Part shown: positions 1,385 to 60,142 of the stretch, piece after piece | How the letters are laid out: every line of letters begins with the position of its first letter | Numbering within the stretch: position 1 is the first letter of the stretch | Origin: Laetmonice hystrix | Lineage: Eukaryota | DNA length: 64,000 nt | Direction of reading: 5' to 3' | Assembly (NCBI GenBank): GCA_965235115.1 | Contig: OZ249451.1 | Coordinates: 10,292,001-10,356,000, forward strand | Notes under the pieces: generated by a model | Seen by the model: the letters and a program-made list of their open reading frames with translations, nothing else | What the model was told of the DNA's origin: nothing | Database searches by the model: none | Position numbers and translations under genes: made by a program

Positions 1385-4300
1385 TTATTTGACTTCAGTG
1401 TTGATTTTTATGCAAGGGATACACGCAAAAAGCCCTCCTCGGGTTGAGCCCTCTTCTTTGCTGGTCGCCATGGGAACATCGTTGTCGGGATCTGAACGCC
1501 GTGCCCCAGGCACAGCTGAGGCCTCCTCCTGACCTTCCCCGGGCCTGACCGGGGATTCTTCATGGGGATCCGATGTTGATGGCGAGGCCTCCTCTGTATC
1601 TGATTCTGTATCTGATTCTTTTGATGGCAGCACATCAAACATAGAGTACGCGTCATCGTTTTGGCTGAGGCAAAGATCCGAACCCTGGTCCACAGATAAA
1701 TAGTACGCTGTCAAAATAATTAAAACATTTCACATAGAGCAATACAAACTAACAGGTATTTAGCAGAATTCTAAACAAAAGTAATTGAGGTTTTTATCCG
1801 TTTTAATGTGTGTTGGCCCGTGTCAACATCCCACCTGTGTGTTGGAATTGTGTCAATCTCCCACATAATGTGTGTTGCCCCGTGTCAACAATCCCAAATA
1901 ATGTGTAATGGCCCGTGTCAACATTCCGCATAATCAAATGTGTGTTGGCTTTGTATCAATAGCGTATATGAGTATTTAGCTGTTGTTGGTTGGATGACGT
2001 TAACTCACCTGCATTCTCAAAGGCTCTCAGTGTGACCGACCTGAGGCCAGCTCCCACTGCGTAGTAAAACAGATACTTCCATGGAGGGTCATCAGCGTTG
2101 AAGGTGGAAACCTGCTTGGAGAGCGGTACAGTGACGGTATCATAATAATAGAATAATGCTTCCCCACATCATGTTAAAATGTCAGGTTCGAGCTATGAGT
2201 GAAAGTAGTTTAAAAATCGAATGGAAAGTATGTCTCCACTGTCCTACAGCAGCAGGGACCTGCCTGGCTTCCACTTCGACTCCGCTGCCATATTTGGACA
2301 TAACTTATGCCTAAAAATAGATTACGGCTAGCTCCCAGCCAGTGCTGGCTTCAGAAAATAGCGGTCAGACCGAACGGTAACTTGGGGCGCTAACATAACT
2401 CCATTTTTAAAATACTTTCGCCTATCTCTTGAACCTGAAATTTTAATATGGTTTCACTAGTCTTCAGAGGTAAGCATTTAAATAATTTGGGGTGGCACTT
2501 TAAAGGCGCTCATGCTGTTAATCAATTTCTGAATTGACAACGTAACTGAACTGGCCAAGGAGTTCCGAGTAAGCTGTATACTTGCCGAGCTGTCCACGGA
2601 GGGAGGATCCGTGTTGTTAAAATAGACGTAGACGTCCGAGGCGTGATTGACCGTAGTCGCCAGGCCAGATTCGCCGGAGCCGGCTGGCCACACAAGGTAC
2701 ATCAGAAGGTTCATCAGGTCATCTAGTCAACACAGTATTTGATCATGTGGGAGCGGATCATGTGGGAGCGGACTGGGTGACGTCCGCCCAGACAGAATAA
2801 AAGGTTTCAGTCGCTGAGTTTTGTCTGCATAAATAACATTATTCATTTACATCGTCTTGTGTTCAGTCTTGGTGCCGATTCATTCACCAACTGCTCGATC
2901 AACAACCCATCCACCCGTACTCACCTGCGTCTTCTTGTAGCCATCCCTTCACCAACTGCTCGATCAACAACCCATCAACCCGCACTCACCTCAGTCTTCT
3001 TGTAGCCATCCCTTCACCAACTGCTCGATCAACAACCCATCAACCCGCACTCACCTGCATCCTCTTGTAGAGGCCCTATGAATATGTACGTGTCGTTTCC
3101 CCTCATTGCATTCGCTGGTTTGCCCACCGATTTAAGGTAAATGTCGGTCAGGTCGGATGATGGCCATCGTATGACGGATGTGTCGTCTGATGACTTGCTA
3201 ACAATAGCCTTCACCGTAATACTCCTGACGGGAACGTCCACTGTACACAGAACACGGACAATAATTGTACCTCATCAGGCGGTCCATGCATTTCGCCTCT
3301 TTAAAAATAGCAGGCCATGACGTTGAATCTTTAAAATGCGTCGAATTCACGTTCATTTCCTGGCTTATCGCATGTATTGGTGTCAGATTATTGTGCCCTA
3401 AGAACATTGAGATAAACTCTATCCCAGTATTGACAATAACTTTGGAGTAGATAATGTGACTTTCACCCTGGCAGTGGGCCAAAACTGCGTGTAATTTTCA
3501 GAGGAATCCCAAATCAGTTTCCCAAATTACTAATGAACATATTGTACAATAAAAAAACCCTGTTAATTAAAGTGGCCCATAAGTTTGTTAAGAACTTGCC
3601 AGTGTCAATGTCGAGCGTTGCTTCAACAGCTGTGTAGTGATATCTGAACTTCCCGCCCGTAATAGGCCGTCGGTATAACTAGAGAACATATAATGAAGTG
3701 CATGGATATGTCGGTATAACTAGAGAACATATAATGAAGTGCATGAATATGTCGGTATAACTAGAGAACATATAATGAAGTGCATGAATATGTCGGTATA
3801 ACTAGAGAACATATAATGAAGTACATGAATATGTCGGTATAACTAGAGAACATATAATGAAGTGCATGAATATGTCGGTATAACTAGAGAACATATAATG
3901 AAGTACATGAATATGTCGGTATAACTAGAGAACATATAATGAAGTACATGAATATGTCGGTATAACTAGAGAACATATAATGAAGTACATGAATATGTCG
4001 GTATAACTAGAGAACATATAATGAAGTGCATGAATATGTCGGTATAACTAGAGAACATATAATGAAGTGCATGAATATGTCGGTATAACTAGAGAACATA
4101 TAATGAAGTACATGAATATGTCGGTATAACTAGAGAACATAATATTATTATGAAGTGCATGAATATGTATACGGTACAGACACAAACTTCCTGTATTAAA
4201 TACAACATTTTCCTGTGTTTAACACCCACACCCACGCGTGTGTGCACTGAGATGTTTATTGTCTTACACCCACACATACATTTATGTGTGTATGTCACCA

Positions 4301-5472
4301 CCAGGCCATGGTAATACAGGAAATATGCCTTTGATATCAATGGAAATAAGTCAATATGCTGAGGTGATTTGCTAAACTCACAATGCGAACACACTTTCAC
4401 ACTTTACCATTCTTAAATCAAAAAGAATTCAGTATTCCGTATAATTATATCTTCACAAGCCAAGCACTATATAATTCGGATTATCGAGGTTTATTCTAGC
4501 AACCATCGTTGGATAGGACCGAAGGCAAATCTCATACACCGAAAAGATCATGCAATATCCAAGTACATATATCTACTGGGCTTGACCGAGGGGGAGGGAT
4601 TCTCGCCTCTAAGATACAGGTTCCGTCTCCTCCTCCTCCCCTGCTCCTCCTCCTTCTCCTCCTCCTCCTCCCCTCCTATAGGCCTATGATGTAAGTAACC
4701 CATGGTATACGTACAAGCAACATGTTTGACTTGAGACCGAAGAAGAGTTCGACGACGACCTGGTGGCTTCGGTTGACAAGCGGCACGAAGTTCAACATGA
4801 GGAGCTCATCATTATCGCTATGACCCAAACGTCAGTCATGGGTGGAGATGTGTACATAGTATAATAAAAAATGAATGTATTGGTTGTATTTGATCAAATT
4901 ATGTAAAATTGACTCTGTAGTATGTGGTACAATTCTCTACTTTGGGGCATTCTCAAAAGTAGCATTAGCCTGGTACCCATTGCATAGTGGGGATAGAGCC
5001 CCCTTCTTACCCTAAATTATACATAAAAAAGGAAAATATACCTAAGTGAGGCGCGATAGTTATAAATTGCTAATTTCCAACTCTTACCGTAGCTGTAGTT
5101 TATCCTTGACGAGATCTAGAGATATTTCCTCACAGAAGTGTCTCAGGTGACCATCCACCAAGAGCGTCCGTATTTTAAATCCCAGAAAAGGAATAAGCGT
5201 TTCCTGAAGAAAAAAAATCATAACATAATCTAACACAAGACTGAAGGTCAAAATAAACATATAAATTTATGCAGCTTTGCAGTATCGTGTATACGTTTCA
5301 CAAAATCTATCATGACTTATTTAGTTTCCCCCCTGATCTGGGTCCCGACAACGACCCAGGGAGCTGAATGAATACCCACCTTCTCATGGTCTTCATTGTC
5401 CGCGGGCGGATATGTGGTGCTCTCGGATTCTGAGGGTCTCTCGGCCGCGGTTGATGTCTCTGAATCATCCAT
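1385..5472 (-). CDS. Leaderless protein with putative IL-1-family-like beta-trefoil domain, acidic low-complexity N- and C-terminal tails (~354 aa, 7 coding exons)
   Basis: Hand-spliced exons (minus): 5472-5380 (MDDSETST...DHEK), 5203-5088, 4817-4711 (or 4715), 3240-3055, 2722-2586 (GC donor GCAAGT), 2111-2009, 1707-1385 (stop). Phases are compatible at every junction; the exon3-exon4 link is the least certain (weak donor GTATAC at 4710, or stronger GTACGT at 4714 plus an unidentified exon). The exon structure is well supported; the IL-1 fold call rests on visual alignment only. Confidence 0.6.
2885..3070. repeat. 65-bp tandem repeat x3 that copies the exon end and 5' splice site of the IL-1-like gene
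   Basis: Units start at 2885, 2950 and 3015; each contains actcacct (GTGAGT donor on minus) next to the exon-end sequence. Confidence 0.85.
3670..4140. repeat. 41-bp minisatellite, ~12 copies (intronic)
   Basis: Unit tcggtataactagagaacatataatgaagtgcatgaatatg; cggtataact recurs at 3671, 3712 ... 4081, 4122; no unique spacers. Confidence 0.95.
4627..4675. repeat. (CCT)n microsatellite
   Basis: ctcctcctcctcccctgctcctcctccttctcctcctcctcc. Confidence 0.85.
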
Positions 5473-6181
5473 GATGGACTTTGACCTATCTATGGAATCG
5501 GTCCTTCTGAGGGTAAATTGTCAGAAGATGTCGGCCTGTTGTGAATATCTGAACTGGCACTAGTTTTCAGATCTCTGCCTTAAGTATAGCCTCCTGTCAG
5601 ACGCTCCCTATACCAGCAGATCCCTTCTGATGGCAATAGTGCCTTTCTAGAAATCAAGTACACTTCCCAGTCAGGAACAGTACCGCTGTAATTGTGTCAG
5701 ACCAAACGGTATCCGGGTTAGCGGCCCATTGTGGACCACTTACAGTGGACCACCACCGGATGCATCTGTTTACATCACTAAATAGGTAGGTAACTACTTG
5801 CAGAGTCATGTCGCTTCCGTGTCATGGCTTTTCGGTCAGCGGTTTTATAGCCGCCGGAGATACATGTGGTTATACTCGTCTCCCGCTATTTGGATTTAAA
5901 TTTTCTGGGCCTCCCGGAAAACTCAAGTAAATATAGAGATTTTTATGTACAGTCCTGAGTTGCTAAGCAACAAAAACAATACCACATTATAATTCAATTT
6001 ATAATTTAATAACACAGCCCCACTCTTAGATATCAGAAGAAGAACCGCCGGACTCCTTCAAACAATCCTTCAGAATCCTTCCTTCCGGGAGCTGTTATTT
6101 TTTCTATTCTATTCCATTTGAAACAAAAAACAAAGTACGCGAGAGATAGTGGCTAGTACAGAGCCCTGTTGGGGAAAACAG

Positions 6182-8426: not shown

Positions 8427-8816
8427 NNNNNNNNNNNNNNNNNNNNNNNNNNNNNNNNNNNNNNNNNNNNNNNNNNNNNNNNNNNNNNNNNNNNNNNNNN
8501 NNNNNNNNNNNNNNNNNNNNNNNNNNNNNNNNNNNNNNNNNNNNNNNNNNNNNNNNNNNNNNNNNNNNNNNNNNNNNNNNNNNNNNNNNNNNNNNNNNNN
8601 NNNNNNNNNNNNNNNNNNNNNNNNNNNNNNNNNNNNNNNNNNNNNNNNNNNNNNNNNNNNNNNNNNNNNNNNNNNNNNNNNNNNNNNNNNNNNNNNNNNN
8701 NNNNNNNNNNNNNNNNNNNNNNNNNNNNNNNNNNNNNNNNNNNNNNNNNNNNNNNNNNNNNNNNNNNNNNNNNNNNNNNNNNNNNNNNNNNNNNNNNNNN
8801 NNNNNNNNNNNNNNNN
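8427..8816. other. Assembly gap (N run)
   Basis: 390 N bases. Confidence 1.
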
Positions 8817-17231: not shown

Positions 17232-20200
17232 TTAAGTTGATTTAAAATTGAAGGTCAATATATGATCGGACTCATGGGCAGTCATATTAACACACCCTCC
17301 ATGTTTCTTGATCGTATCCACAATGTTTTGAACAGAGACACTGGAAGACATCATTTCAAAGTTCTTCCACTCATGGTTAGTCCATGCTAATACTGGTACG
17401 ATATCATTGAGGAACGTCGACAAACTATCGTCAAACGTGACGTACGGTAGACGTATCGTCTTACCAACGGTACCTGCACTGCCAGAGATGTGACTGGAAA
17501 TCATTTTCCAGGTGTTTGGACAAACACGCAAGTTTGTCCAGTCGTACAGAAGCATAAGTTCTGATTGTTCAGTCATATAACGGATGTTTCTTTTCGCAAT
17601 TAGCCTACAGTTTTGAAACGTGCACTGAGGCATCTGGAGGACTAGATGGAAGGTTTCCAAATGTTCTATATTAATGATATCAGCATCTTTGAAAACAACA
17701 TATTGACTAATACTATTCTTCAGAAACTCTTCCATGACACATGCCTCGACTATGCAGTAGAAGAATCTAATTCTGATGTTCTTGACGTTTCTCTGCAAAT
17801 CATCGCCTTGCTTTGTAATCGCCTCAAGTGTCTCCTTACAAAGGTCGCCTATCAGGACTTTTAGAATACTTCCAAGGGTAATATCAACTTTATAAACTCG
17901 ACATGACGCTATGTTTGTCAGAACCCTATCGGCGTTTTCACCGTCTACTCTCCACGCGTGAATACAAAGTTCGTTAAGAGTTTTACCTTGCGGTAGTATG
18001 CCAGCGATGGATCGGATCTGTTCACACTCTAGCGTTATTTTCTTTAGACCTTCATCACATAACATGCCTAGTTGTTGTCTTATTGTCCGGACGGTTTGTT
18101 CAGTCGGGCCATTTTCGTCTCCCACTGACGCCATATCAATGACCACCTCGTTTATTGGGTAGCCCTGTTCGCGATGTAACAAAGCCCATGCCAACCCTTC
18201 AGCATTTCGACAGTCAATGCGAAGACTTTCGCTTTCGACATTGGTGGTCACGTACACACACTGCCACCTACCGGCAACAGGTAGAACTTGGTTGACCTTG
18301 GAGAGTTTTTCACGGGTTAATTCTTTCCTGTAGCCAGGGAGAAACTCGTTGAGAATCAACCTTTTTTCAGTTCGTTTCGATTCTTCAGTTGGTAAGGAAA
18401 ATTCACAGTTCAATTTCTGGCACCAAAATAAGCACTTCCCGATGGCCCGCCGCTCTAGGCTCCCCTTTCTACAGTCTTCGCAAACTTTCTCTGTTATTAA
18501 TGTGGCACACAATGTCATGACGTCACCGAGGACATTGACCGATTTATCTGCGGCTTTCAGAGATTGGGTGCCCATGATGAGTTTATCCAGTTCGTCCAAG
18601 TCCCAACAGCTATATTTCTTGAGTTGCGATTGGGCCTGTTTCAATGCCTCAACACAGTGTTCATGAGCCATACTGTCCGACAACGATGGGTTTTCTGTGG
18701 ATAATAACTTGCACACAAACAATGAATTCCGAGATAATTCGGCAAGCAGGCCCGCCAAATACATGCAGACGTTGGTGTAGACATCTTGGCACGACATCAT
18801 TGTAATGAACATGAGCTGGGATTCCTGGTCTAGTTGCTCAACCCCTTTGGCTGCGAGATATTCTTGCATACTCAAGTGTGGGAATGAATAGTAGATCTGC
18901 TCTCCATCTTCGTCTGCTGTCACAGAGTATTCCCTTGTCAGGAAGCCCAGCCGCAGCGACCTGCTATCGTCGTCGATGTCAAACTGAAGGAGGGCCGCGG
19001 GTGAGAACTGAAACTGCCCATGGACCATGCCATGAAGGGCGACGCGATAAAGCTTCTTCATTTCTACCACAATGTCGTCTGGTATCTTACTTTTCTCACA
19101 GTACCGACGCAGAATGCTGCGTTCCATCATGGCGTAAAGTGCGGTCATGGTTACCCGACCGGACGGCAGTTTCCTGTGAGGGTCACTCCACCAAGTACAC
19201 AGCATGAAACACTTCAAGGGCGTTTGCTGTATGTCCGATGAAATATCTTCACTGTCCTGCAGAAATCTCAGTAGGGACTCTCCTTTTTCCTTCTCATCTT
19301 CAAAGAATGATCGAATATATCGTTTTGCCTGTGACAAAGTGAAACCTAGATTCTTCACCTCTTTCTGGAAGTATTCAGAAAACTCATTCGCCATGTTTGA
19401 TCGACACGTGGCCAATATGTACGCCCCAGAGAATTCTGTGCCGGATAACAAGGCATGTAGAATACTTCTAACCTCAGGGTAGCAACCCTCATCTAGGCCG
19501 TCAATGATAAACAAACACTGTGACGGATGTGTCAACATGTATTGAAAGGCGAGTTCCTTTTGTTCAGGGGTACCACATAGAAGACTTTTAACTGCCTGTT
19601 CAAAGCCTTTGCGCATGCTCCTGACATCTATCAAGATGACGAACTCGAACGTGTGGGTGAAGTAGAGTTTATTGGTGGTCGGACATCCCCAGTCGTAGGC
19701 GATCTTCCTACAGAGGAATGTCTTACCGACACCAGGGTCCCCTTCGACCAGCACACGTTGTGGCACGGTACCGCAAGTGTCAGCCGAGAATAGCTGCTCA
19801 AATTCCACGTCACCAACGTAGTTCCTGCAAGAAAAACAACAACATTGTATTCCTTGTATGTACTTAGCATTTGCTAGGTTGATTTCAGACAGACACTACA
19901 ACTTGTGAAAGCTTTTAATCTGAAAGCAAGCCCCATGACACAGATAGGACATGCCGTATTTATGAAAGATACAATTTGTATATATATACCATCTGAATAT
20001 GAGCCTAAATTCAGAATATAACCTAAGAGTTAATGCATGAAGACTTTTCTTGTACGTCATTGTTGTTTTTGTCTATAGTGAGAATAAAGAGAAAGAGAAA
20101 GTTAAACTGACCCTTTAATTCTGGACTTGAGTACTAAACGATTGAAAAGTTTGGCGACATTTAGGTGTGGTGAACGTTCCGCCCATGGATACACCTTGAC

Positions 20201-21617
20201 GACCAGCGCGTTGTTATGGTAACGCTCTTTTAGCGCCGCCTGTGCTTTTAATATATCTGCATCTAAAAAAGAACAATAATTTCTATTGTGACAAATTTTT
20301 AAATTGCGTTGCGTTATAAAAATTATCTTAGTCTATTAGAGCCAAGAATTTGATAGCACCCTTTCTGAACATACCCCTGAACCTACCGTGGTTTTCATGA
20401 GAAACAGACGTCACCATAGCGCCCCCTGTGAGCATACCCCTGAACCTACCGTGGATTTTTTATGAGTGAGCAGACAGATGTCCCTTTAGCGCCCTCTGTG
20501 AGTGTCCACCTGAACCTACCGTGGTTTTCATGAGACAGACGTCACTATAGCGCCCTCTGTGAGTGTCAACCTGAACCTACCGTGAGTGGTCTTCATGAGT
20601 GGAGAGACGTGCGTCTCTTCCAGCGTCTTGCACAAGTGGGGGTAAGTATCAGAGAGAGCGTCCAGAAACGTCCGGTAGGCGTCAGGACCGCGCCGAACGA
20701 TAATCTGCAGTAGCCTGAACGTAATAAACGACACGGACAAGGTTAGAAGAAGTGAAACCGTTGAGCATATGGAGGATAGCCTAAGTCCTAGGCCTACTGA
20801 TTTAATCTGATGCTGATTCGAGCCCCCACCACAGATGTTTTGATAAGACTACAGTCTACATTTCCACATAGGCCTATCATACTCGTATATATTTCACATT
20901 GTCGCAAGGAATATCGCGATAAATTCATAAATGAGATCAGGGAGGCGTTTCACAACCATCGTTATTCTGTCGTGTGTTAAAATCCCCATTGAAAATACAT
21001 TGGTGTTAACGATACGATAAGCTAACGACAGGCTGTGAAACAGTTATCTAATAGAGGCCAGCTCCTGCATGGTTTCGCGAGTCAGTCATAGCGTCTAAAA
21101 CATCCGAACCTCACTTTGCCAACGTATAGGCCTACGTGGGTGAGTTGCAAAGGAAAATTAAAGGGGTTATTATAATAATAAATAATAATAATAGTTATAT
21201 ATCGTAAAATCCACCGAAGTGTTCTAAAATGCTGTAACAAAACAATAAAAATCCAATACTGAAATAAATACTAAATAATTACACATCACAGATTATCACA
21301 GCTACCATATGTCTTAGTAATAATTTAAACGGCTTTCAGTCAGAGTATTGCACAAACAGATAGGTCTTTAAATTCTTTTTAAAAGTGGCTAAAGTATGAC
21401 TTTGCCGTAGCTCTAGTAGGAGTGATTTATGAGTGATTATATGTGCCGACCTTCTGACACACTCCTTTCGGGTGACATTTCCTGCGTATATCTGGTCTCT
21501 ATCGTCCAATGTCAACACTCCCTCCTGAATCAACAAATCTTGAACATCATCAACGCTCAGATCTTCCACCAGATGGCTCCACCCTCGCTGTAACTTGATC
21601 CGTTCAGCCGGTTCCAT
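17232..21617 (-). CDS. NOD-like receptor: N-terminal CARD, NACHT NTPase, winged helix, divergent C-terminal region (~1014 aa)
   Basis: Exons 21617-21451, 20714-20581, 20262-20112 and 19824-17232, phases 2/1/2 consistent. CARD-like MEPAERIKLQRGWSHLVEDLSVDDVQDLLIQEGVLT...RLLQIIVRRGPDAYRTFLDAL; Walker A GDPGVGKT; Walker B LFIIDGLDE; FPHLSMQEYLAA motif. Confidence 0.92.
20375..20590. repeat. ~60-67-bp tandem repeat x4 that copies the NLR exon-2 end and donor site
   Basis: ctgaacctaccgtg (CACG|GTAGGTTCAG on minus) occurs four times. Confidence 0.8.
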
Positions 21618-34400: not shown

Positions 34401-37063
34401 AAATAGTGCATAGTTATGTACCGTGGCACGCATACTTACCACAGGTCGTCGGCTATGATGGAAGGCAGGCAGGAAACCATTCTGTATGCTCCTAATATCG
34501 CCTATTGCCACACAGGTCACCGTTTGGGCTATCGGCTGAAGGTAATTATAATTACGCTGAGTACGCAGGCCTTCTTTCATGTCGGTTCGTCATGAATAAA
34601 ATCTACAAATCTCTTACATGGGACGTAGTAACCAAGGTAGTCCAAGGTCCATATAGTTCTTATAATAGGCCTTTGCTATAAACTTCTGCCTCTATTAGTT
34701 GACGATTTAATATTTATTTATTCATTAATATAACTACATCCCTCACAGTTCGTCGTCATTGTGATTGAAGTTTTATTTCAGCTCTACCGATTCCAAATAG
34801 TTTTCTATTTTCAAATCATTCCATGAGTGGTTGATTCAGGAGAGCGTAACCAAGCCTACCATGGCTGTATCCATGGAGATACCGAACGATACGTATCCAG
34901 GAGTAACCGCCGTTACCTCGATGTCAACACTCGATCCTGATTGGTCAGGTTTGAAAGATACAGCATACCGGCAGTCGTTCCCGGTACACCAATCAGGATA
35001 CAGGAGACAACCTTTCGTTCGGCCACATTCGCCATCCAGTGATAGCGCTGGCGAGATCGTACCAGAAACCTACAAACGCAAACATGTGAAAAGAAACGGA
35101 GAAATAGAAATGAAACTGAGACTTACAAATTGTTTTCCACAAACTGATTCATATACAGATTGCAGAATTGTGAAAAGGGACGAAATCCGACATGGAAAAC
35201 AGGCAAAATTTGGGCCCAGCGCGAAACCCAAACCAAACGAACAGGCATGACCTCAGAACTGTAAGCCATTAGGACAAATTTACCCAGATCCATTGAATGC
35301 GGCCAACCATACCTGATAGGGGTGTGGGGTAATGGAATTGTCTGGTTGAGTGGCCTGCAGTATAGCCTCGATCCCGTTCAGCCAGAACTTCTCGTAGTGC
35401 TCCACCACGGTGGCTCTTCAATATTCAAACGATCAGCTACGAAATTATTAAAACCGCCCCCTACTCTCGGCAATTTGCGCGTTGCCAATTATACATATAT
35501 AATATATCTGTTACATATATGCACACAATGACCTAGATCATATATACATGTATACTAGTAGTAGATTTATGTCTCCATGGTAAGTACTAAGCATATACAA
35601 CATGCATTAGGGTCATGTCACATTGACGTTATCAATACTATTGAACTGGGTTGGTGGGATTCACTGACCGGAAAATGAGATCTCCTCGAGAGACGCCTGG
35701 AGCTTGCCAGGAAACAGTTACCGACTTCCGGTTCGCCGGGTACATGTGAGTAACACAGTTCTAGACATGGAAAAGAGAAAAATGAAATTCAAAACACATT
35801 AATCGGATTATAAAACGTCGTACATGCTTTAAATAATATGAATAGATTCTTTTAGTGAATGATTGAAAACGTGATTTGTGTAGATTCTGTATATGGGGGT
35901 ATGTCTGACCATATCCGCTGCATTCAAAAGTATTTTATGCATGCACATAATTCTCTTGTTTCTCATGCATATTGCAAGAAGGTTTATTTTACTGTAGATT
36001 AGATTATATAAGATCTTCCTGTCTTATGAAATGTTGTTATGTACTATATTCTATTAATTCTGAANNNNNNNNNNNNNNNNNNNNNNNNNNNNNNNNNNNN
36101 NNNNNNNNNNNNNNNNNNNNNNNNNNNNNNNNNNNNNNNNNNNNNNNNNNNNNNNNNNNNNNNNNNNNNNNNNNNNNNNNNNNNNNNNNNNNNNNNAGGG
36201 TGGCTCCTGTCCCGCAAGAGCCTGTGAGTCCGCCCCTCACGTAGAAATCCTCACATTGATCCTGGGTAGGTTGGTAGTAATGGGCCAGAAGAATACACCC
36301 TTTATCCCCTCTGGGACGGCAATAAACTCGCCCATCAGATCTTCATTTTGACGCTGGTGCTGCAGAGCTCGGAGGACAAGTCCCCTAATCTCCGCCCCAG
36401 ATACTGACGTGATGGTCACTGGAAATGTACAAAAAATATCATTAGATTCTTATCGGAAATAACCCTTCATAGAACTCCGAGAAGTTTAGCAGAGAAAAAT
36501 GAACTTGGGGATTTGTTTTGGTGGGGAAGGCTTGAAGGCCCTCTGTATACTTTGAACGCCGTGTCGTAGAGAGTTGGATATCGGTCCCAAGTCGGTTGAG
36601 TGTTCTATATGTGGGGAACTATGTTCTGGGCGGAGGTACACTTCCGGTGCAGCCCGGGCTGTGCGAGGCGGCCTTGAGCAGAGTATCATGGTTATTTATA
36701 GAACAGTCAACCGACTTGGGACGGATATCCAGGGGGCGCCACTCTCTTCGATACGGCATTCAAAGTATACAGTGGACCTTTAATTCCAATCACAGCCAAA
36801 CTGATGTATTTGGCTATGTGTTGTAAAGTTTTTGGTCATGCTATTTCAGAAAGAGACATGTCCAGCTGCGCATGCTCACCTGTGATGACGTCACTGGGGT
36901 TGTAGGTTGGCTGAGAGAGTCGGAGTTCATACGGTGCTTTCGTTGTCTGCCGCTGGGCGCCACTGTGGTGGGGAACTCCACTAATGCATGTCGACGCCGG
37001 CGCTCCAGTGGGGAAACTCTGAACTAGACAAAATAATAAAACATGTTTTGTCAGTGTTTTCAT
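31403..37063 (-). CDS. FRRS1: Ferric-chelate reductase 1-like (signal peptide, reeler, DOMON, cytochrome b561), ~609 aa, 13 coding exons
   Basis: Exons 37063-36880, 36418-36255, 35760-35669, 35415-35313, 35069-34860, 34535-34440, 34147-33964, 33641-33525, 33112-33000, 32760-32674, 32483-32327, 31852-31712 and 31584-31403, all phase-compatible. Reeler VTH...VSWQAP; CGRTKGC; DOMON Met (SMDTAM) and His (QKH); four b561 His (RAHG, QVHR, IHG, WIHR). Confidence 0.93.
33380..33515. mobile_element. Short MITE with cagggcc termini and central ctgattgg/ccaatcag palindrome (relatives at ~28715-28845 and ~62155-62337)
   Basis: accagggcccagttttccgtaagcttaga...tctgattggttgttctcagcagaccatccaatcaga. Confidence 0.5.
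36065..36196. other. Assembly gap (N run) within FRRS1 intron 2
   Basis: 132 N bases; the gene model is phase-complete without sequence from the gap. Confidence 1.
36540..36778. mobile_element. MITE with ~70-bp inverted arms in FRRS1 intron 1
   Basis: ctgtatactttgaacgccgt...cccaagtcggttgagtgttctata pairs with tatagaacagtcaaccgacttggg...acggcattcaaagtatacag. Confidence 0.7.
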
Positions 37064-47725: not shown

Positions 47726-50247
47726 ATGGGAGAGAAAACTTTACTGGTTACAGCTAAGGAAACTGAAGAACCTTTCACCTATCGACAGAAGGTCACTCGG
47801 AGTGGGTTACTCGCCGGAATTACGTTCAGTATAGTCAGTATTAATATACACATGTTGACTGGCCATTAGGGCACGTCTGCTCCCCCCCCCCCCGAGGGCC
47901 AGTGGGGGATCCAGGATTTTGATAAGGGGGCTCGCCAAAAAGATTTCTTAGCCTCGCTACGCTCGGCATGCTTTGATTGTGCCTGTATTACACACACACA
48001 AAATAATTGCTATTAACACACTTCTAAATGTTTTATTTTATTCAAATACTATAATCTAAGGGGGCCCTGGGCCCCCTGGATCCCCCAGTGTACGCCTATA
48101 TGTTCCGGCCACAATGCTCATGTTCCCGTTTATATTTGTCAGGGTCTGTCTGACGGCGTGATCGGCCCGACCCTGTTAGACCTACAGGTCCTCGTAGGGA
48201 CAGACACTGCCGGGATATCGTGGGTGTTCGCCGCACGTAGTATTGGCGGTTTTGTCGGGACTCTAATCGCTGGAAGACTCTTGTCTCTGATCAACATCTG
48301 GTTGACCGTTTTTGGAGCACTCATATTGTGCGCCGTCACAGTGGCAGTTGTGACGTCATGTCGTCAACTCGTGACCCTGGCTTTCGTTTTTACCGGCATA
48401 GGCGTCTCTGCTGGCTATCTCAACACTGGTTGGTTGATTTCTCATTAATTTCATTCACAACCATAGTTTTATTCCGATTATTACATGAACAATAAGGATA
48501 TATAATTTATGTGATATTTGGTTAAAATAACACTTTAAGTATTACGAGGAATTGACGACATATACATGGCCTATGCTCTAAGAAGGTGGGACAACACTCC
48601 AACGGAGACAGATATAAAATTTACCATTTTAATATTTCAACTTTGGACTGCTATTCTAGGAAGGCATTTATTAGAGCCATTTAATCTCTCGTTTTAAACT
48701 GTCGTGTTTGCATAAGCATTTCAATACTTGAGAGATGCATATGGATTGGTTATATTTTAATATTTCTTTTGGTTTTGAGTTTTTCGATCAACCCCAAGAT
48801 TTTCCTTGCACAAGTACACATCCTACAATACAATAAAATGAGTGTCTTTGTGAATAAAGGAACAATAAGAATCATACATTAATAGTATATCATATAAACA
48901 TAAAGGTTTTTCAAACATTTGAAAAAAGTTGCATATTACATGGTGTACTTTTCACTAGCGCTTTCAGAAGCATGGGAAAACTCAAAATGTATATTTTCTG
49001 AGGGACTGCCGTTACACGCCAGAAGTAGATCCTATCAAAGATGGTTGTTAAATTAGGCCTTCTCCCAACGATTGTCTACAAAACCGAAAATTTCTGAGAA
49101 GAATTGAACATTATTCCAACACTAAACCCCCAGATAGTTGTCTATTGAGCACATTAAAACTTCTCCGACAGGATTTTCCATCCTTGCAACAGCACTGTGG
49201 GATAAAGACAACGGACCGTGGGTACAAGGCATACAATTTTTTTTTGGTGTTGGATCTCTCATCGGCCCTCTGGTGGACAAAGCGTTCCTGTCAAGGTCAC
49301 CAGACAACATTGGAGACACCAGTTACGTGGGAAGCAACAGAAACAATACCGTGAACCAAACGGTCAGTGACCTGCAAAACGCTTCCGTCGGCGCAGTTGA
49401 CCGGATGCAGTTATTTTGGGCATATTTCATCATAACGCTCGCTATTCTTCTTGTGGCGGCTGGGTCATTCACGTTTGCAATCCTCGATCGTAACAAGACT
49501 CGCCACCTCGTGCAGAGACATCATGACCAAGGGCCCCCCAATGAAGACAACATCGAAAAGGAAAATGTCGCCCTTGGCAAGTACAACAGAATTCAGGGTT
49601 TCCTTAGACAGATGTGTAGGGATATAAATATGTTCAAACTCAAGCTATTAAGTGCCCTCCTTGTTCTAATCTTCACGAGCGCGTTAATACAAACTAATTA
49701 TGGCTATTTTCTCTCACCCTTCGCCGTAAAGAAACTGGGTTGGACGAAACAGGTGGCCGCTTCAGTGACGTCATTGTACTGGGGGTCGTTAACAATTGGA
49801 AGGGGTCTCAGTGTTGTAATTATTAAGTTCGTCCATCCTCGGATCGTTATAGGGGGATTCGTCATCGTCATTGTGATTGTCCTCGTGCCCTTGATGGTTT
49901 GTCCCGATGCCGACGTGAGCGTCCTCTGGGTGTGTAGCGCGGTACTAGGCTGTAGCGTTGGTCCATTGCAGGGCGCTGTTCTCACGTGGACAGAACGTTA
50001 TGTGGTGGTCACTGGTGCTGTTGGAGGCGCGACTTGTGGTTTTGGCTATGCTGGGGACATAATTGGGGCAATTTTGATGGCGAACGAGCACATCGGTCCT
50101 GATTCCCTTTCTTTCCTCATCTTTGGCGCAGCTTGCTTTGCTCTTCTGGCATTCATTGCTGCGCTAATTGTCATCCATGGTTGTGGAGAAAAGGGGGCTG
50201 AAAGCAAAGAGGAAGAGAAGAGGAAAGCTATAAGCTTTCAGGGATGA
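47726..50247 (+). CDS. MFSD4: MFS transporter, MFSD4/Na-dependent glucose transporter-like, copy 1 (intact, 489 aa)
   Basis: Exons 47726-47833, 48143-48428 and 49172-50247; family motifs GPTLLDL and GPWVQGIQFFFGVGSLIGPL; about 12 hydrophobic segments. Confidence 0.9.
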
Positions 50248-56901: not shown

Positions 56902-59900
56902 ATGGGAGAGAAAACTTTACTGGTTACAGCTAAGGAAACTGAAGAACCTTTCACCTATCGACAGAAGGTCACTCGGAGCGGGTTACTCGCCGGAATTACG
57001 TTTATTATAGTAGGCCTAAGTAGCCTAGGCTATTAATCCCATTTATTGCTCACTTCAAACAATATTTTCTGCTAACACTGATATAAGCTACATACCAGTC
57101 TCAGAAAACAGAACTGGACGGACTATGTGTTCTTTGTGCGATCGCGGATTTTTCAAAAATTATGCGTATAGGCCTCCCATCCTTTATGTAAAAAGTAGGC
57201 CTATATGGTAGGGCCTAGGTCTATATAGGCCTGTAGGTATTGCGGAATGCAGTAGGCCTAAATCTTTCGAGAGATGCTTTTATTCCTTTGCTGTCGCAAA
57301 CTTCATCAGGTCGTTACCATAGAATGCGGTCGAAACCTTAAGGTAGTATCCCACTGGGCTGCGACAGCTCGCGAAGAGTTGGAGATACGAAATTGCGAGA
57401 AAATACGCGAATTAGCGACAATTTTCACGTGGAATCACACTGAATTGGTACTTACGACACATTTGCGTATGTCGCACTGCGAATAAATTGCGACATTCGT
57501 ACGACATACACATGACATTCGCGCGAATGTGGTGCAATTCTTTTGTCGCAATTTAGTCACAAAGTGTCTTAGTTATGTCGCAAATTGTTCGCAATTGATT
57601 CTCAATTGATTCACAATTTTGTCTCCAATCAGTCACAATTTAGTTTCATAGGTCGCCACCCCCTCACAAAGTTGTCTCACATTTCTCGCAGTTTCTGACT
57701 CACGGAAACTAAATTGAGAAGGGTTCGAGACGGGTTCGAGACACCCGCGACGACTCTTCGACTATTTTGAGAGAGCATTTGTCGCACCAAATTTTTAAAG
57801 ATGTTCAAAATTCCAGCGACACGAGTGCGAGGCCCTGCGACTCACGCGAGGGAATTGGGAACCCCGCGAACGTTTCGAGACATTTTGGAAACTCCTTCGC
57901 AAATGCCATTCACAATTTGTCACCAACATTCGCAGCCCAGTGAGATACGGGCTTAAGATGTTCCATGTTTTCAGGGTCTGTCTGGTGGCGTGGTTGGTCC
58001 GACCCTGTTAGACCTACAGGTCCTCGTGGGGACAGACACTGCCGGGATATCGTGGGTGTTCGTCGGACGTGGTATTGGCGCTTTTGTCGGGACTCTAATC
58101 GCTGGAAGACTTCTGTCTCTGATCAACATCTGGTTGACCGTTTTTGGAGCACTCCTATTGGGCGCCGTCACAGTGGCAGTTGTGACGTCATGTCGTCAAC
58201 TCGTGACCCTCGCTTTGGTTATCACCGGCATGGGTGTCTCTATTGGCTACCTTAACACTGGTCGGTTGATTTCTCATTAATTTCAGTCACAACCATCGTT
58301 TTATTCCGATTATTACATGAACAATAATGATCTATAATTTAAGTTATACCTGGTTCATATAACACTTTAAGTATTACGAGGAATTGACGACATATAAATG
58401 GTCTATGTTCTAAGAAGGTGTGACAACACTTCCATGGGGACAGATATGAAATTTAGGCCTACCATTTTATTATTTCAACTTTGCACTGCTATTGTAAGAA
58501 GGCATTTATGACAGCCATTTAATCTCTCGTTTTAAACAATCGTGTTTGCATATCATTTCAATACTTGACAAACGCATAGATTGGCTATATTTGTTCTAAA
58601 AATAAGTTTAATATTTCTTTTGGTTTTGAGTTTCTCAATCAATCCTGTAGGCCTACTGGTCTACTGTTAGAGATTTTCCTTACAAGAGGACACATTCTTC
58701 AATTAATTTAGGTGACCTTTCGTGGTTACAGATTTTTTCTAATGAAATGATTGTGAATAAAAGAACAATAAGAGCCATACATTAATAGTATATTATATAA
58801 ACATAAAGGTTTTCCAAACATTTGAAAAGTTACATATTACAGCGCTTTCAGAAGCATGGACAAACTCACCGGCTTTCAAATGTATATTTTCTGAGGGACT
58901 GTCGTTAGTAGTTTCCTATCAAAGATGGTTGCTAAATTAGACCTATTCCCAACGACTGTCTACAAAACCGAAGTTAGGACGAAAATTTCTGAGAAGAATT
59001 GAACATTATTCCAATACTGAACCCCCAGATAGTTGTCTACTTAGCCCATTAAAACTTCTCCGACAGCATTTTCCATCCTTGCAACAGCACTGTGGGATAA
59101 AGACAACGGACCGTGGATACAAGGCATACAATTCTTTTACGGTGTGGGATCTCTCATCGGCCCTCTGGTGGCCAAACCGTTCCTGTCAAGGTCACCAGAC
59201 ATTATTGGAGACACCAGTTACGTGGGAAGCAACACAAACAACACCGTGAACGAAACGGTCAGTGACCTGCAAAACGCTTCCGTCGGCGCAGTTGACAGGA
59301 TGCAGCTATTTTGGGCATATTTCATCATAACGCTCGTTATTCTTCAAGTGGCGGCTGGGTCATTCACGTTTGCAATCCTCGATCGTAAAAAGACCCGCCA
59401 CCTCATGCAGAGACATCATGACCAAGGGAGCCCCAATGAAGATAACATCGAAAAGGAAAATGTCGCCCTTGGCAAGTACAACAGAATTCAGGGTTTCATT
59501 GGACAGATGTTTAGGGATATAGATATGTTCAAACTCAAGCTATTAAGTGCCCTCCTTGTTCTAATCTTCCAGAGCGCGTTAGTACAAACTAATTATGGCT
59601 ATTTTCTCTCACCCTTCGCCGTAAAGAAACTGGGTTGGACGAAACAGGTGGCCGCTTCAGTGACGTCATTGTACTGGGGGTCGTTAACAATTGGAAGGGG
59701 TCTCAGTGTTGTAATTATTAAGTTCGTCCATCCTCGGATCGTTATAGCGGGGTGCGTCATCGTCATTGTGATTGTCCTCGTGCCCTTGATGGTTTGTCCC
59801 GATGCCGACACGAGCGTCCTCTGGGTGTGTAGCGCGGTACTAGGCTGTAGCGTTGGTCCATTGGTGGGCGCTGTTCTCACGTGGACAGAACGTTATGTGA

Positions 59901-60142
59901 TGGTCACTGGTGCTGTTGGAGGCGCGATTTATGCTTTTCTCTATGCTGGGGAATCAACTGGGGCAATTTTGATGGCGCTCGGGCCCATTGGCCTTGATTC
60001 CTTTTCTTTTCTTATCTTTGGCGCAGCTTGCTTTGCTCTCCTGGCATTCATTGCTGCGCTAAGTGTCATACATGGTTGTGGAGAAAAGGTGGCTGAAATC
60101 AAAGAGGAAGACAAGAGGAAAGCTATAATCTTTCAGGGATGA
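56902..60142 (+). CDS. MFSD4: MFSD4-like MFS transporter, copy 3 (intact, 489 aa)
   Basis: Exons 56902-57009, 57975-58260 and 59067-60142; open reading frame throughout. Confidence 0.9.
57342..57952. mobile_element. 611-bp MITE with TTAA target duplication, in copy-3 intron 1
   Basis: TTAA|ggtagtatcccactgggctgcga ... tcgcagcccagtgagatacgggc|TTAA; empty site in copy 2 (~53225). Confidence 0.85.

What the first reader, a model, noticed from the sequence alone, without database searches (positions are those of the whole stretch)
1385..3240. Candidate invertebrate interleukin-1-family (beta-trefoil) cytokine with IL-1-like intron phases
Seen in sequence: spliced exons give DVPVRSITVK...LTDIYLKSVGKPANAMRGNDTYIFIGPLQEDA|DDLMNLLMYLVWPAGSGESGLATTVNHASDVYVYFNNTDPPSVDSS|VSTFNADDPPWKYLFYYAVGAGLRSVTLRAFENA|AYYLSVDQGSDLCLSQNDDAYSMFDV, with no signal peptide. 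From recalled knowledge of human IL-1beta (APVRS...ELKALHLQGQDMEQQ|VVFSMSFV...IPVALGLKEKNLYLSC...PTLQLE|SVD...[29 protein letters not shown]...PVFL...ITDFTM), the hydrophobic strand pattern lines up segment by segment (YLFYY~FVFNK, YYLSV~WYIST, SMFDV~TDFTM). Two introns fall at corresponding places with the same phases: a 186-nt phase 1-1 exon then a 137-nt phase 1-0 exon, versus IL1B exons 5 and 6, which I recall as 165 nt (1-1) and 131 nt (1-0). Inference: a divergent IL-1-superfamily member in a non-vertebrate, a family classically treated as vertebrate-restricted. I recall structure-based reports of invertebrate IL-1-like proteins, so novelty must be checked.
Basis: partly seen in the sequence, partly recalled or inferred. 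Interest (0 to 1): 0.85.

Follow-up and report, generated by a model that had tools for sequence, protein, structure and literature searches.

The report
Expressed PDZ plus IL-1-like gene
The flagged exons are the back half of an expressed eight-exon invertebrate gene whose protein joins a PDZ domain to an all-beta, IL-1-like C-terminal domain, the layout published in 2025-26 as "ancestral IL-1" (IL-1anc), so it is probably a new, very divergent member of a known family.

Summary
The four minus-strand exons (3240-3055, 2722-2586, 2111-2009, 1707-1385) splice in frame with the stated phases. One spliced contig in a transcriptome-like run of the same sample confirms every junction, including both GC donors.

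The stretch is only the 3' half of the gene. Four upstream exons (5472-5380, 5203-5088, 4817-4715, 3678-3600) complete a 379-aa leaderless protein:
- an acidic N-terminus;
- a PDZ domain, whose family profile hits solved PDZ domains at E 3.8e-5;
- a linker with DxxD sites;
- an all-beta domain of about 170 aa;
- an acidic tail.

Five further intact-looking paralogues lie on contig C7, and a broken partial copy lies on C21.

PDZ plus IL-1 trefoil, trefoil intron phases 1,1,0 and an FES-like motif are the published marks of IL-1anc (PMC13736523) and fish nIL-1F.

No piece matches Pfam IL1 or solved IL-1 chains. Conserved synteny is absent. I could not predict the fold, because the spliced protein has no reference.

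Verdict: likely a divergent IL-1anc member (about 0.65). The invertebrate-IL-1 idea itself is already published. This scan had noted the stretch before only as this same finding and as a neighbourhood note.

The parts
5380..5472 (-). Coding exon 1: ATG at 5472, 31 codons, ends in phase 0. It encodes the acidic, leaderless N-terminus. The same exon continues as 5'UTR to at least 5700.
   Evidence: Splice logic. Contig joint 5203|5380, with one unbroken piece over 5379-5700. No upstream ATG and an in-frame stop in the 248 nt before it.
5088..5203 (-). Coding exon 2 (116 nt, phase 0 to 2): first half of the PDZ domain, with the FLGF carboxylate-loop motif (ETLIPFLGFKIR...RHF).
   Evidence: tblastx against the C7 paralogue. 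Six-paralogue alignment A6. Joints 4817|5088 and 5203|5380.
4715..4817 (-). Coding exon 3 (103 nt, phase 2 to 0): second half of the PDZ domain (DNDELLMLNFVPLVNRSHQVVVELF...).
   Evidence: Profile A5 hits solved PDZ domains: MAGI-1 at E 3.8e-5, Par-3, MPDZ, and about 30 of the 38 hits overall. The paralogue piece hits Pfam PDZ_6 at E 0.04. Joints.
3600..3678 (-). Coding exon 4 (79 nt, phase 0 to 1, GC donor GCAAGT): linker LYRRPITGGKFRYHYTAVEATLDIDT. Its acceptor is the last unit of the 41-bp tandem repeat.
   Evidence: Same length and RRP..F.Y.T.V pattern as the 79-nt mini-exon of the C7 paralogue. Joints 3240|3600 and 3678|4715.
3055..3240 (-). Coding exon 5 (186 nt, phase 1 to 1): DTVD|VPVRS site region, then the conserved block (I/V)x(L/V)KSVGxPxxxMxG....I.(I/L)GxL, read as strands 1-3.
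   Evidence: Alignment A1. Genome profile search. Joints.
2586..2722 (-). Coding exon 6 (137 nt, phase 1 to 0, GC donor GCAAGT): LLMYLVW...GLATTVN...VYVYF, read as strands 4-7.
   Evidence: Alignment A2. Joints 2111|2586 and 2722|3055. The three allelic differences here are all synonymous.
2009..2111 (-). Coding exon 7 (103 nt, phase 0 to 1): ..NADDPPWKYLFYY...SVTLRAFENA, with the FES-like motif (FEN).
   Evidence: Alignment A3. Joints.
1385..1707 (-). Coding exon 8 (phase 1 to stop TAA at 1387-1385): AYYLSVDQGSDLCLSQNDDAYSMFDV, then an 80-aa acidic Ser/Glu/Asp-rich tail. The 3'UTR continues to about 740, with AATAAA at 732.
   Evidence: Alignment A4. One unbroken contig piece over 1101-1707 that runs on about 360 nt further. 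polyA signal.
3669..4168 (.). 41-bp tandem repeat, 12 copies, inside intron 3. Each unit carries an acceptor-like TTCTCTAG.
   Evidence: and sequence. Skipped by the transcript.
2883..3070 (.). 65-bp tandem repeat, 2.9 copies, that triplicates the exon-5 donor region. Only the first donor (3054) is used.

Best explanation
The stretch is the last four coding exons of an expressed eight-exon gene on the minus strand (CDS 5472 to 1385, mRNA about 2.0 kb). It encodes a 379-aa protein without a signal peptide. The parts are an acidic N-terminus (1-31), one PDZ domain (about 32-104), a linker with two DxxD-type sites (LDID/T and DTVD/V, residues 126-132), an all-beta domain of about 170 aa (132-299) and an 80-aa acidic tail. 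This layout is that of the 'ancestral IL-1' family (IL-1anc; fish nIL-1F), and the gene is most likely a very divergent member of it. It belongs to a lineage-specific expansion of six intact-looking genes plus one broken copy. Shown here: the gene model, its expression, the PDZ domain, the paralogue family and the intron phases. Inferred: that the C-terminal domain is an IL-1-type beta-trefoil. Also inferred, by analogy with the lamprey and sea-urchin IL-1anc proteins of PMC13736523: the protein is made in the cytosol of immune cells, cut by a caspase between PDZ and trefoil, released without a signal peptide, and acts on IL-1R-like Ig-TIR receptors.
For: Gene model: all seven introns are skipped exactly by one 2023-nt contig of run X4 and by no contig of DNA runs X1 or X3. 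The ATG at 5472 is the first in the transcript and has an in-frame stop upstream. PDZ: the exon-3 family profile hits MAGI-1, Par-3 and MPDZ PDZ domains at E 3.8e-5 to 6e-3, at PDZ positions about 55-80. The FLGF loop is in exon 2. Family: exon profiles find the same exon series on C7 at 8.32, 8.34, 12.28, 12.30 and 20.72 Mb. Intron phases 1,1,0 at E4|E5, E5|E6 and E6|E7 equal the last three IL-1beta introns (PMC4880838). PMC13736523 reports conserved trefoil intron phasing, PDZ + trefoil, an (F/L)ES motif and length under 500 aa as the marks of IL-1anc. Motifs: window RAFENA|AYYLSVDQ; paralogue C7c VSFEALNLPG; others ..S(F/L)xP....(P/D/S)G | YY(L/V)S(T/V)D...L.L....MF(D/E)(V/I)L. Exon 6 of the paralogues reads YYL.LS....AVAIRLS...VYLEV. 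A crude Chou-Fasman profile of the alignment gives about 12-13 beta segments and no helix (weak evidence). Allelic differences: three of three in exon 6 are synonymous.
Against: No exon piece of the window or of the paralogues matches Pfam IL1 PF00340 at E up to 10. The genome-wide PF00340 search does not pick these loci. Exon profiles A2-A4 hit no solved IL-1 chain. phmmer with exon 5 against 1.84 billion representatives finds only one 81-aa exon-level ORF (P0002) and no annotated IL-1-like protein. The window copy has FEN, not (F/L)ES, and lacks the PG that follows it in IL-1. EIF2A, ESD and GRIP-domain genes lie on other contigs (C10, C1, C3, C8), and no TIR gene among the 42 best hits lies nearer than about 0.9 Mb. 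The fold was not predicted. The internal three-fold repeat is not significant (hhalign self-comparison, E 0.6).
Confidence: 0.65

Rival explanations
1. A PDZ scaffold or adaptor protein whose C-terminal all-beta domain is a lineage-specific fold unrelated to IL-1. On this view the intron phases and the FES-like motif are coincidence.
For: No statistically significant sequence link to any IL-1. No conserved IL-1anc synteny. A phase series 1,1,0 has a chance probability of only a few per cent, not negligible (my estimate).
Against: PDZ followed by an all-beta domain of about 170 aa, in a leaderless protein under 500 aa, is the architecture used to define IL-1anc. Intron positions as well as phases fall where IL-1beta has them. 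The paralogues carry an IL-1 signature-like S-F-E-A-x-x-L-P-G / YY-V-S-T. The authors report that sequence searches also fail for accepted IL-1anc members.
Confidence: 0.22
2. A PDZ domain fused to a beta-trefoil of another superfamily (FGF-like, ricin-B-type lectin, Kunitz-STI-like).
For: About 12 beta segments and a domain size of about 170 aa fit any trefoil. Trefoil lectins are common in marine invertebrates (papers listed).
Against: No Pfam hit to FGF, ricin-B or Kunitz families on any piece. No QxW repeats and no clear three-fold sequence repeat. The intron phases match IL-1. No PDZ + FGF or PDZ + lectin family is known to me.
Confidence: 0.08
3. A transcribed but functionless, decaying copy of the family.
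For: The window copy has the most eroded motifs: LNF instead of (V/L)NG in the PDZ, FEN with a shortened loop, and two GC donors. A broken sister copy exists at C21:17.076-17.078 Mb.
Against: The 379-codon frame is intact across eight exons. All splice sites are used. The contig depth is about 110 in a 58-Mb transcript assembly. Allelic differences in exon 6 are all synonymous. GCAAGT is the normal strong GC-donor context.
Confidence: 0.05

Closest known systems
IL-1anc proteins of invertebrates and lamprey (Fontenla-Iglesias et al., Nat Ecol Evol 2026, PMC13736523; preprint PMC12338702)
   Same: N-terminal PDZ and a C-terminal domain of about 150-170 aa. Under 500 aa, with no signal peptide. 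The trefoil region is encoded by 3-5 exons with conserved central intron phases. There is an FES-like motif. The family shows lineage-specific multi-gene expansion and is not findable by BLAST or HMMER with IL-1 queries.
   Different: The motif is FEN in the window copy. An 80-aa acidic C-terminal tail follows the domain. The reported EIF2A/ESD/GCC2/IL-1R neighbourhood is absent. The trefoil fold, caspase cleavage and immune induction are not shown here. Whether this species or gene is in the paper's Supplementary Table 2 could not be checked.
Fish nIL-1F (lumpfish, 352 aa, PDZ + IL-1 domain, seven coding exons; PMC7144542)
   Same: PDZ + IL-1-type domain, similar length (379 against 352 aa) and a similar number of coding exons (8 against 7). 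A predicted caspase site lies between the domains.
   Different: InterPro recognises the fish protein as IL-1 family. This one is not recognised by Pfam IL1.
Vertebrate IL-1beta
   Same: Leaderless pro-protein. The last three introns have phases 1,1,0 (PMC4880838). An Asp-containing site lies directly before a (A/V)PVRS-type start of the beta-rich part (resemblance recalled, not tested). Strand patterns resemble ..VALGL..LYLSC and FES..WYIST (recalled).
   Different: IL-1beta has an IL-1 propeptide instead of a PDZ. This gene has one extra phase-1 intron, splitting the equivalent of the last IL1B exon at the FES motif. There is no significant sequence similarity.

Membership tests
IL-1anc (PDZ + IL-1 trefoil; PMC13736523) | N-terminal PDZ domain | tested here: met
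   Exon-3 family profile against PDB: MAGI-1 PDZ E 3.8e-5, Par-3 4.9e-4, MPDZ 5.8e-3, and most of the 38 hits are PDZ domains. Pfam PDZ_6 at E 0.04 on a paralogue piece. FLGF loop in exon 2.
IL-1anc (PDZ + IL-1 trefoil; PMC13736523) | C-terminal 12-strand beta-trefoil, with IL-1 as the structural match | not testable with these tools
   The spliced protein has no reference, and no full-length relative is in the protein collections, so structure prediction and fold search were left out. The only evidence is a crude beta-propensity profile: about 12-13 beta segments and no helix.
IL-1anc (PDZ + IL-1 trefoil; PMC13736523) | (F/L)ES motif in strand 9 | tested here: inconclusive
   Window has RAFENA. 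Paralogues have VSFEALNLPG, ISLEVFNKG, VSFTPCILSG, MSLSPVQLPG and IGFSPVQSDG. These are related but not exact.
IL-1anc (PDZ + IL-1 trefoil; PMC13736523) | Conserved phases of the central trefoil introns (IL-1beta: 1,1,0) | tested here: met
   E4|E5 phase 1, E5|E6 phase 1, E6|E7 phase 0, all used in the transcript. Reference phases come from PMC4880838. One extra phase-1 intron lies at E7|E8.
IL-1anc (PDZ + IL-1 trefoil; PMC13736523) | Short (under 500 aa) leaderless protein | tested here: met
   379 aa. The N-terminus is acidic and non-hydrophobic. This was judged by inspection; no signal-peptide predictor was run.
IL-1anc (PDZ + IL-1 trefoil; PMC13736523) | Microsynteny with EIF2A, ESD, GCC2 or an IL-1R-like gene (reported for the most conserved paralogue only) | tested here: not met
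   eIF2A lies on C10 and C1, ESD-type esterase on C10, and GRIP on C3, C10 and C8. The nearest TIR hit on C21 is about 0.9 Mb away. The paper notes that further IL-1 genes lie outside these loci.
IL-1 superfamily as defined by Pfam IL1 (PF00340) | Match to the PF00340 profile | tested here: not met
   No hit on any exon piece of the window or of the paralogues at E up to 10. The genome scan picks only two weak, unrelated places. This was tested exon by exon only, which lowers sensitivity.
IL-1 superfamily as defined by Pfam IL1 (PF00340) | Sequence similarity to solved IL-1 family chains | tested here: not met
   Exon profiles A2, A3 and A4 against 177,635 PDB sequences gave no IL-1 chain at E up to 10.
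Other beta-trefoils (FGF, ricin-B, Kunitz-STI) | Profile match or family signature | tested here: not met
   No such Pfam family on any piece at E up to 10. A fold-level comparison was not possible.

The most novel reading that the evidence does not exclude
This would be a fast-evolving, lineage-specific IL-1anc subfamily (six genes plus a broken copy) that has left the ancestral EIF2A/ESD/GCC2 neighbourhood. The window copy lies head-to-tail about 11.5 kb downstream of a CARD-NACHT NLR gene. If that NLR, through a CARD caspase, processes this protein at the LDID/DTVD sites, the locus would encode the sensor and the cytokine substrate of an invertebrate inflammasome side by side.
Probability: 0.1. 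Interest if true: 0.65.

Novelty: new member of a known kind. Interest (0 to 1): 0.38.

Why it matters
If the C-terminal domain is an IL-1 trefoil, this genome adds a seven-locus, highly divergent branch to the recently described IL-1anc family. The window copy comes with a transcript-verified gene model. That extends the evidence that IL-1-type cytokines predate vertebrates. It gives a concrete set of genes for testing caspase processing, leaderless release and receptor pairing in this animal. It also shows how far IL-1 sequences can drift while keeping architecture and intron phases. The principle is already published, so this does not open a new question.

Tried and rejected
- Pfam on single exon pieces of the window and the paralogues: nothing for IL1. 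Only weak PDZ hits on one paralogue.
- phmmer with exon 5 against 1.84 billion representatives. It returned only P0002 (an 81-aa exon-level ORF, 42% identical), a repeat artefact (P0001) and a 4802-aa protein (P0003). No full-length relative was found, so there was no protein id to fold. The P0002 contig could not be fetched.
- Pfam IL1 on the whole genome. The best place, C18:16803536-16803715, scores E 3.9e-4 as a single piece. It is an isolated open frame that needs a frameshift and stops soon after, so I did not pursue it as a bridge.
- Exon profiles against PDB for IL-1: no IL-1 hits. The exon-2 PDZ profile also gave nothing.
- ESM Atlas look-alike search with exon 5: no usable hit.
- hhalign self-comparison for three-fold symmetry: not significant.
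- Synteny test with EIF2A, ESD, GRIP and TIR: negative.
- The supplementary sequence tables of the IL-1anc paper and its preprint are not held.
- Structure prediction, fold search, and whole-protein Pfam or HH comparison were left out. The spliced protein exists only as a string built in /scratch, and long sequences may not be typed.
- The organism could not be identified, because names are coded.

Full report
**The observation**

- 3240-3055: AG acceptor, donor GTGAGT.
- 2722-2586: AG acceptor, donor GCAAGT.
- 2111-2009: AG acceptor, donor GTGAGT.
- 1707-1385: AG acceptor, ends in TAA.

Their lengths and phases are 186 nt (1-1), 137 nt (1-0), 103 nt (0-1) and 323 nt. The joined frame gives exactly the peptides quoted.

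Exon 3240 begins in phase 1, so the coding sequence had to continue upstream.

**The rest of the gene**

A first paralogue on contig C7 was found with the exon-5 peptide. A tblastx of the upstream window against it showed two conserved exons with PDZ-like sequence, at 5209-5063 and 4810-4706.

I read the splice sites in both copies. I also searched for a phase 0-to-1 exon. Together these gave four upstream exons:
- E1, 5472-5380: carries the ATG.
- E2, 5203-5088.
- E3, 4817-4715.
- E4, 3678-3600: 79 nt, the same length as the paralogue's mini-exon and sharing the pattern RRP..F.Y.T.V. Its donor is GCAAGT.

The full CDS is 1140 nt, or 379 aa.

**Transcript evidence**

No run is on record as RNA. 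However, run X4 differs from the DNA runs X1 and X3 of the same sample. X4 holds 58 Mb of contigs, against 517-599 Mb for X1 and X3.

X4 contains one 2023-nt contig, at depth 109.5, with seven joints:
- 1707|2009
- 2111|2586
- 2722|3055
- 3240|3600
- 3678|4715
- 4817|5088
- 5203|5380

These are exactly the model's introns, including both GC donors. X1 and X3 show none of these joints, so X4 carries the spliced transcript.

The contig covers 5379-5700 without a break. The 248 nt upstream of 5472 contain no ATG and carry an in-frame stop. Downstream, the contig runs to about 740, next to an AATAAA at 732.

The contig is the other allele. Its three differences in E6 are synonymous, and one in E1 changes P22 to R.

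**What the protein is**

Residues 1-31 are acidic and not hydrophobic, so there is no signal peptide (judged by inspection).

E2 and E3 encode a PDZ domain. E2 has the FLGF loop. The six-sequence profile of E3 hits solved PDZ domains: MAGI-1 at E 3.8e-5 and 7.5e-5, Par-3 at 4.9e-4 and MPDZ at 5.8e-3. About 30 of the 38 hits are PDZ domains, and they align to PDZ positions about 55-80.

E4 and the start of E5 hold LDID/T and DTVD/V.

E5 to E8 encode about 170 residues. A crude Chou-Fasman profile over four paralogues gives about 12-13 beta segments and no helix. This is weak evidence. An 80-aa acidic tail follows.

**The family**

Exon profiles find the same ordered exon series at five places on C7: 8.318, 8.339, 12.283, 12.295 and 20.716 Mb.

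There is also a partial copy at C21:17.076-17.078 Mb. It is nearly identical in E6 and E7, but E7 is split by an insertion, and neither E5 nor E8 was found.

Identities to the window copy are 18-48% per exon.

Outside this genome, the only relative found is P0002, an exon-level ORF from an ENA assembly, 42% identical over exon 5.

**Comparison with known families**

Fontenla-Iglesias et al. described IL-1anc as an N-terminal PDZ plus a C-terminal IL-1 trefoil (PMC13736523; preprint PMC12338702). According to that paper:
- The family is present throughout Eumetazoa.
- It cannot be found by BLAST, PSI-BLAST or HMMER.
- Members were recognised by PDZ, length under 500 aa, an (F/L)ES motif and predicted structure.
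- The central trefoil introns have conserved phasing.
- Echinoderms, bivalves and crustaceans show lineage-specific expansions.

Fish nIL-1F has the same layout: 352 aa and seven coding exons (PMC7144542).

IL-1beta genes typically have last three intron phases 1,1,0, and their twelve strands lie in the last three exons (PMC4880838). Here the phases at E4|E5, E5|E6 and E6|E7 are also 1,1,0, and one extra phase-1 intron lies at the FES-like motif.

The paralogue alignments show three conserved patterns:
- E6: YYL.LS....AVAIRLS...VYLEV.
- E7: ..DPP...LF......(V/I)S(F/L)......(P)G. Copy C7c reads VSFEALNLPG.
- E8: YY(L/V)S(T/V)D...L.L.....MF(D/E)(V/I)L.

From my own knowledge of IL-1beta, these resemble ..IPVALGL..LYLSC.., FES...P.WYIST and the final strand. 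That resemblance is a lead, not a test.

**What does not fit, or could not be done**

- No piece matches Pfam IL1 or a solved IL-1 chain.
- The window copy has FEN and a shortened loop.
- EIF2A, ESD and GRIP-domain genes lie on other contigs. No TIR gene among the 42 best hits is close.
- The fold, which is the decisive feature, could not be predicted. The spliced protein has no reference and no full-length relative has a protein id.

**Verdict**

The gene model is settled.

The protein is a PDZ-containing, leaderless, all-beta protein with the architecture and intron phases of IL-1anc. I put membership at about 0.65.

The main rival is a PDZ protein with an unrelated lineage-specific beta domain, at about 0.22.

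The mechanism is inferred by analogy only: a cytosolic pro-form, a caspase cut between PDZ and trefoil, leaderless release, and IL-1R-like receptors.

This is therefore a new and unusually divergent member of a known kind.

**Context**

On the same strand, 11.5 kb upstream of the transcript, lies a CARD-NACHT gene:
- CARD in two exons, 21617-21339 and 20740-20531, at E 1.7e-5 and 2e-4.
- NACHT in the 858-aa exon 19808-17232, at E 3.5e-23.

This fits the earlier neighbourhood note s1-327658. It is association only.

Noticed in passing
window 17232-21617 (-): A CARD-NACHT (NLR-type) gene on the same strand, about 11.5 kb upstream of the IL-1-like transcript. The CARD is split over two exons (Pfam CARD positions 4-50 and 51-84). 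The NACHT lies in one 858-aa open exon.
   Followed up: partly
window 3669-4168: A 41-bp tandem repeat of 12 copies in intron 3. Every unit ends in an acceptor-like TTCTCTAG. The last unit supplies the real acceptor of exon 4, so the array is a string of decoy acceptors that the transcript ignores.
   Followed up: partly
window 2883-3070: A 65-bp unit repeated 2.9 times that includes the exon-5 donor (CAG|GTGAGT). It creates two extra donor copies in the intron. A 95-nt low-depth X4 contig lies on 2929-3023.
   Followed up: no
L033 (G000:C21:17075914-17079009): A partial, near-identical duplicate of exons 6 and 7 of the window gene, 6.8 Mb away on the same contig. Exon 7 is interrupted by an insertion of about 500 nt, and neither exon 5 nor exon 8 was detected. 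It is probably a pseudogene fragment.
   Followed up: partly
L009 (G000:C18:16803536-16803715): An isolated 60-aa open frame that scores E 3.9e-4 against Pfam IL1 (positions 30-85). It is followed, in another frame, by HRLYYISVNQLYR and a stop. It is either chance or a decayed IL-1-like remnant.
   Followed up: partly
L020:9231-9674 and L021:8983-9180: The open frames of the last exon in the two C7 paralogues at 12.28-12.30 Mb end in ..SCVRI* and ..TCVQF*. These hydrophobic-x-hydrophobic C-termini look like class II PDZ ligands, which raises the idea of a tail-to-PDZ contact. The window copy ends ..NTEVK* and lacks this.
   Followed up: no
window 49138-50247 and 59144-60142 (+): Two long open frames with Major Facilitator Superfamily matches (E 1.5e-8 and 7.2e-8). 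They are likely tandem transporter genes.
   Followed up: no
G000 genome-wide: At least 42 TIR-domain places, most inside single open frames of 770-1200 aa, with a cluster of 11 on C12 at 21.12-21.49 Mb. This looks like an expanded intronless TLR-like repertoire.
   Followed up: no
window 8427-8816 and 36065-36196: Runs of N (390 and 132 bases). I left them as they are.
   Followed up: no
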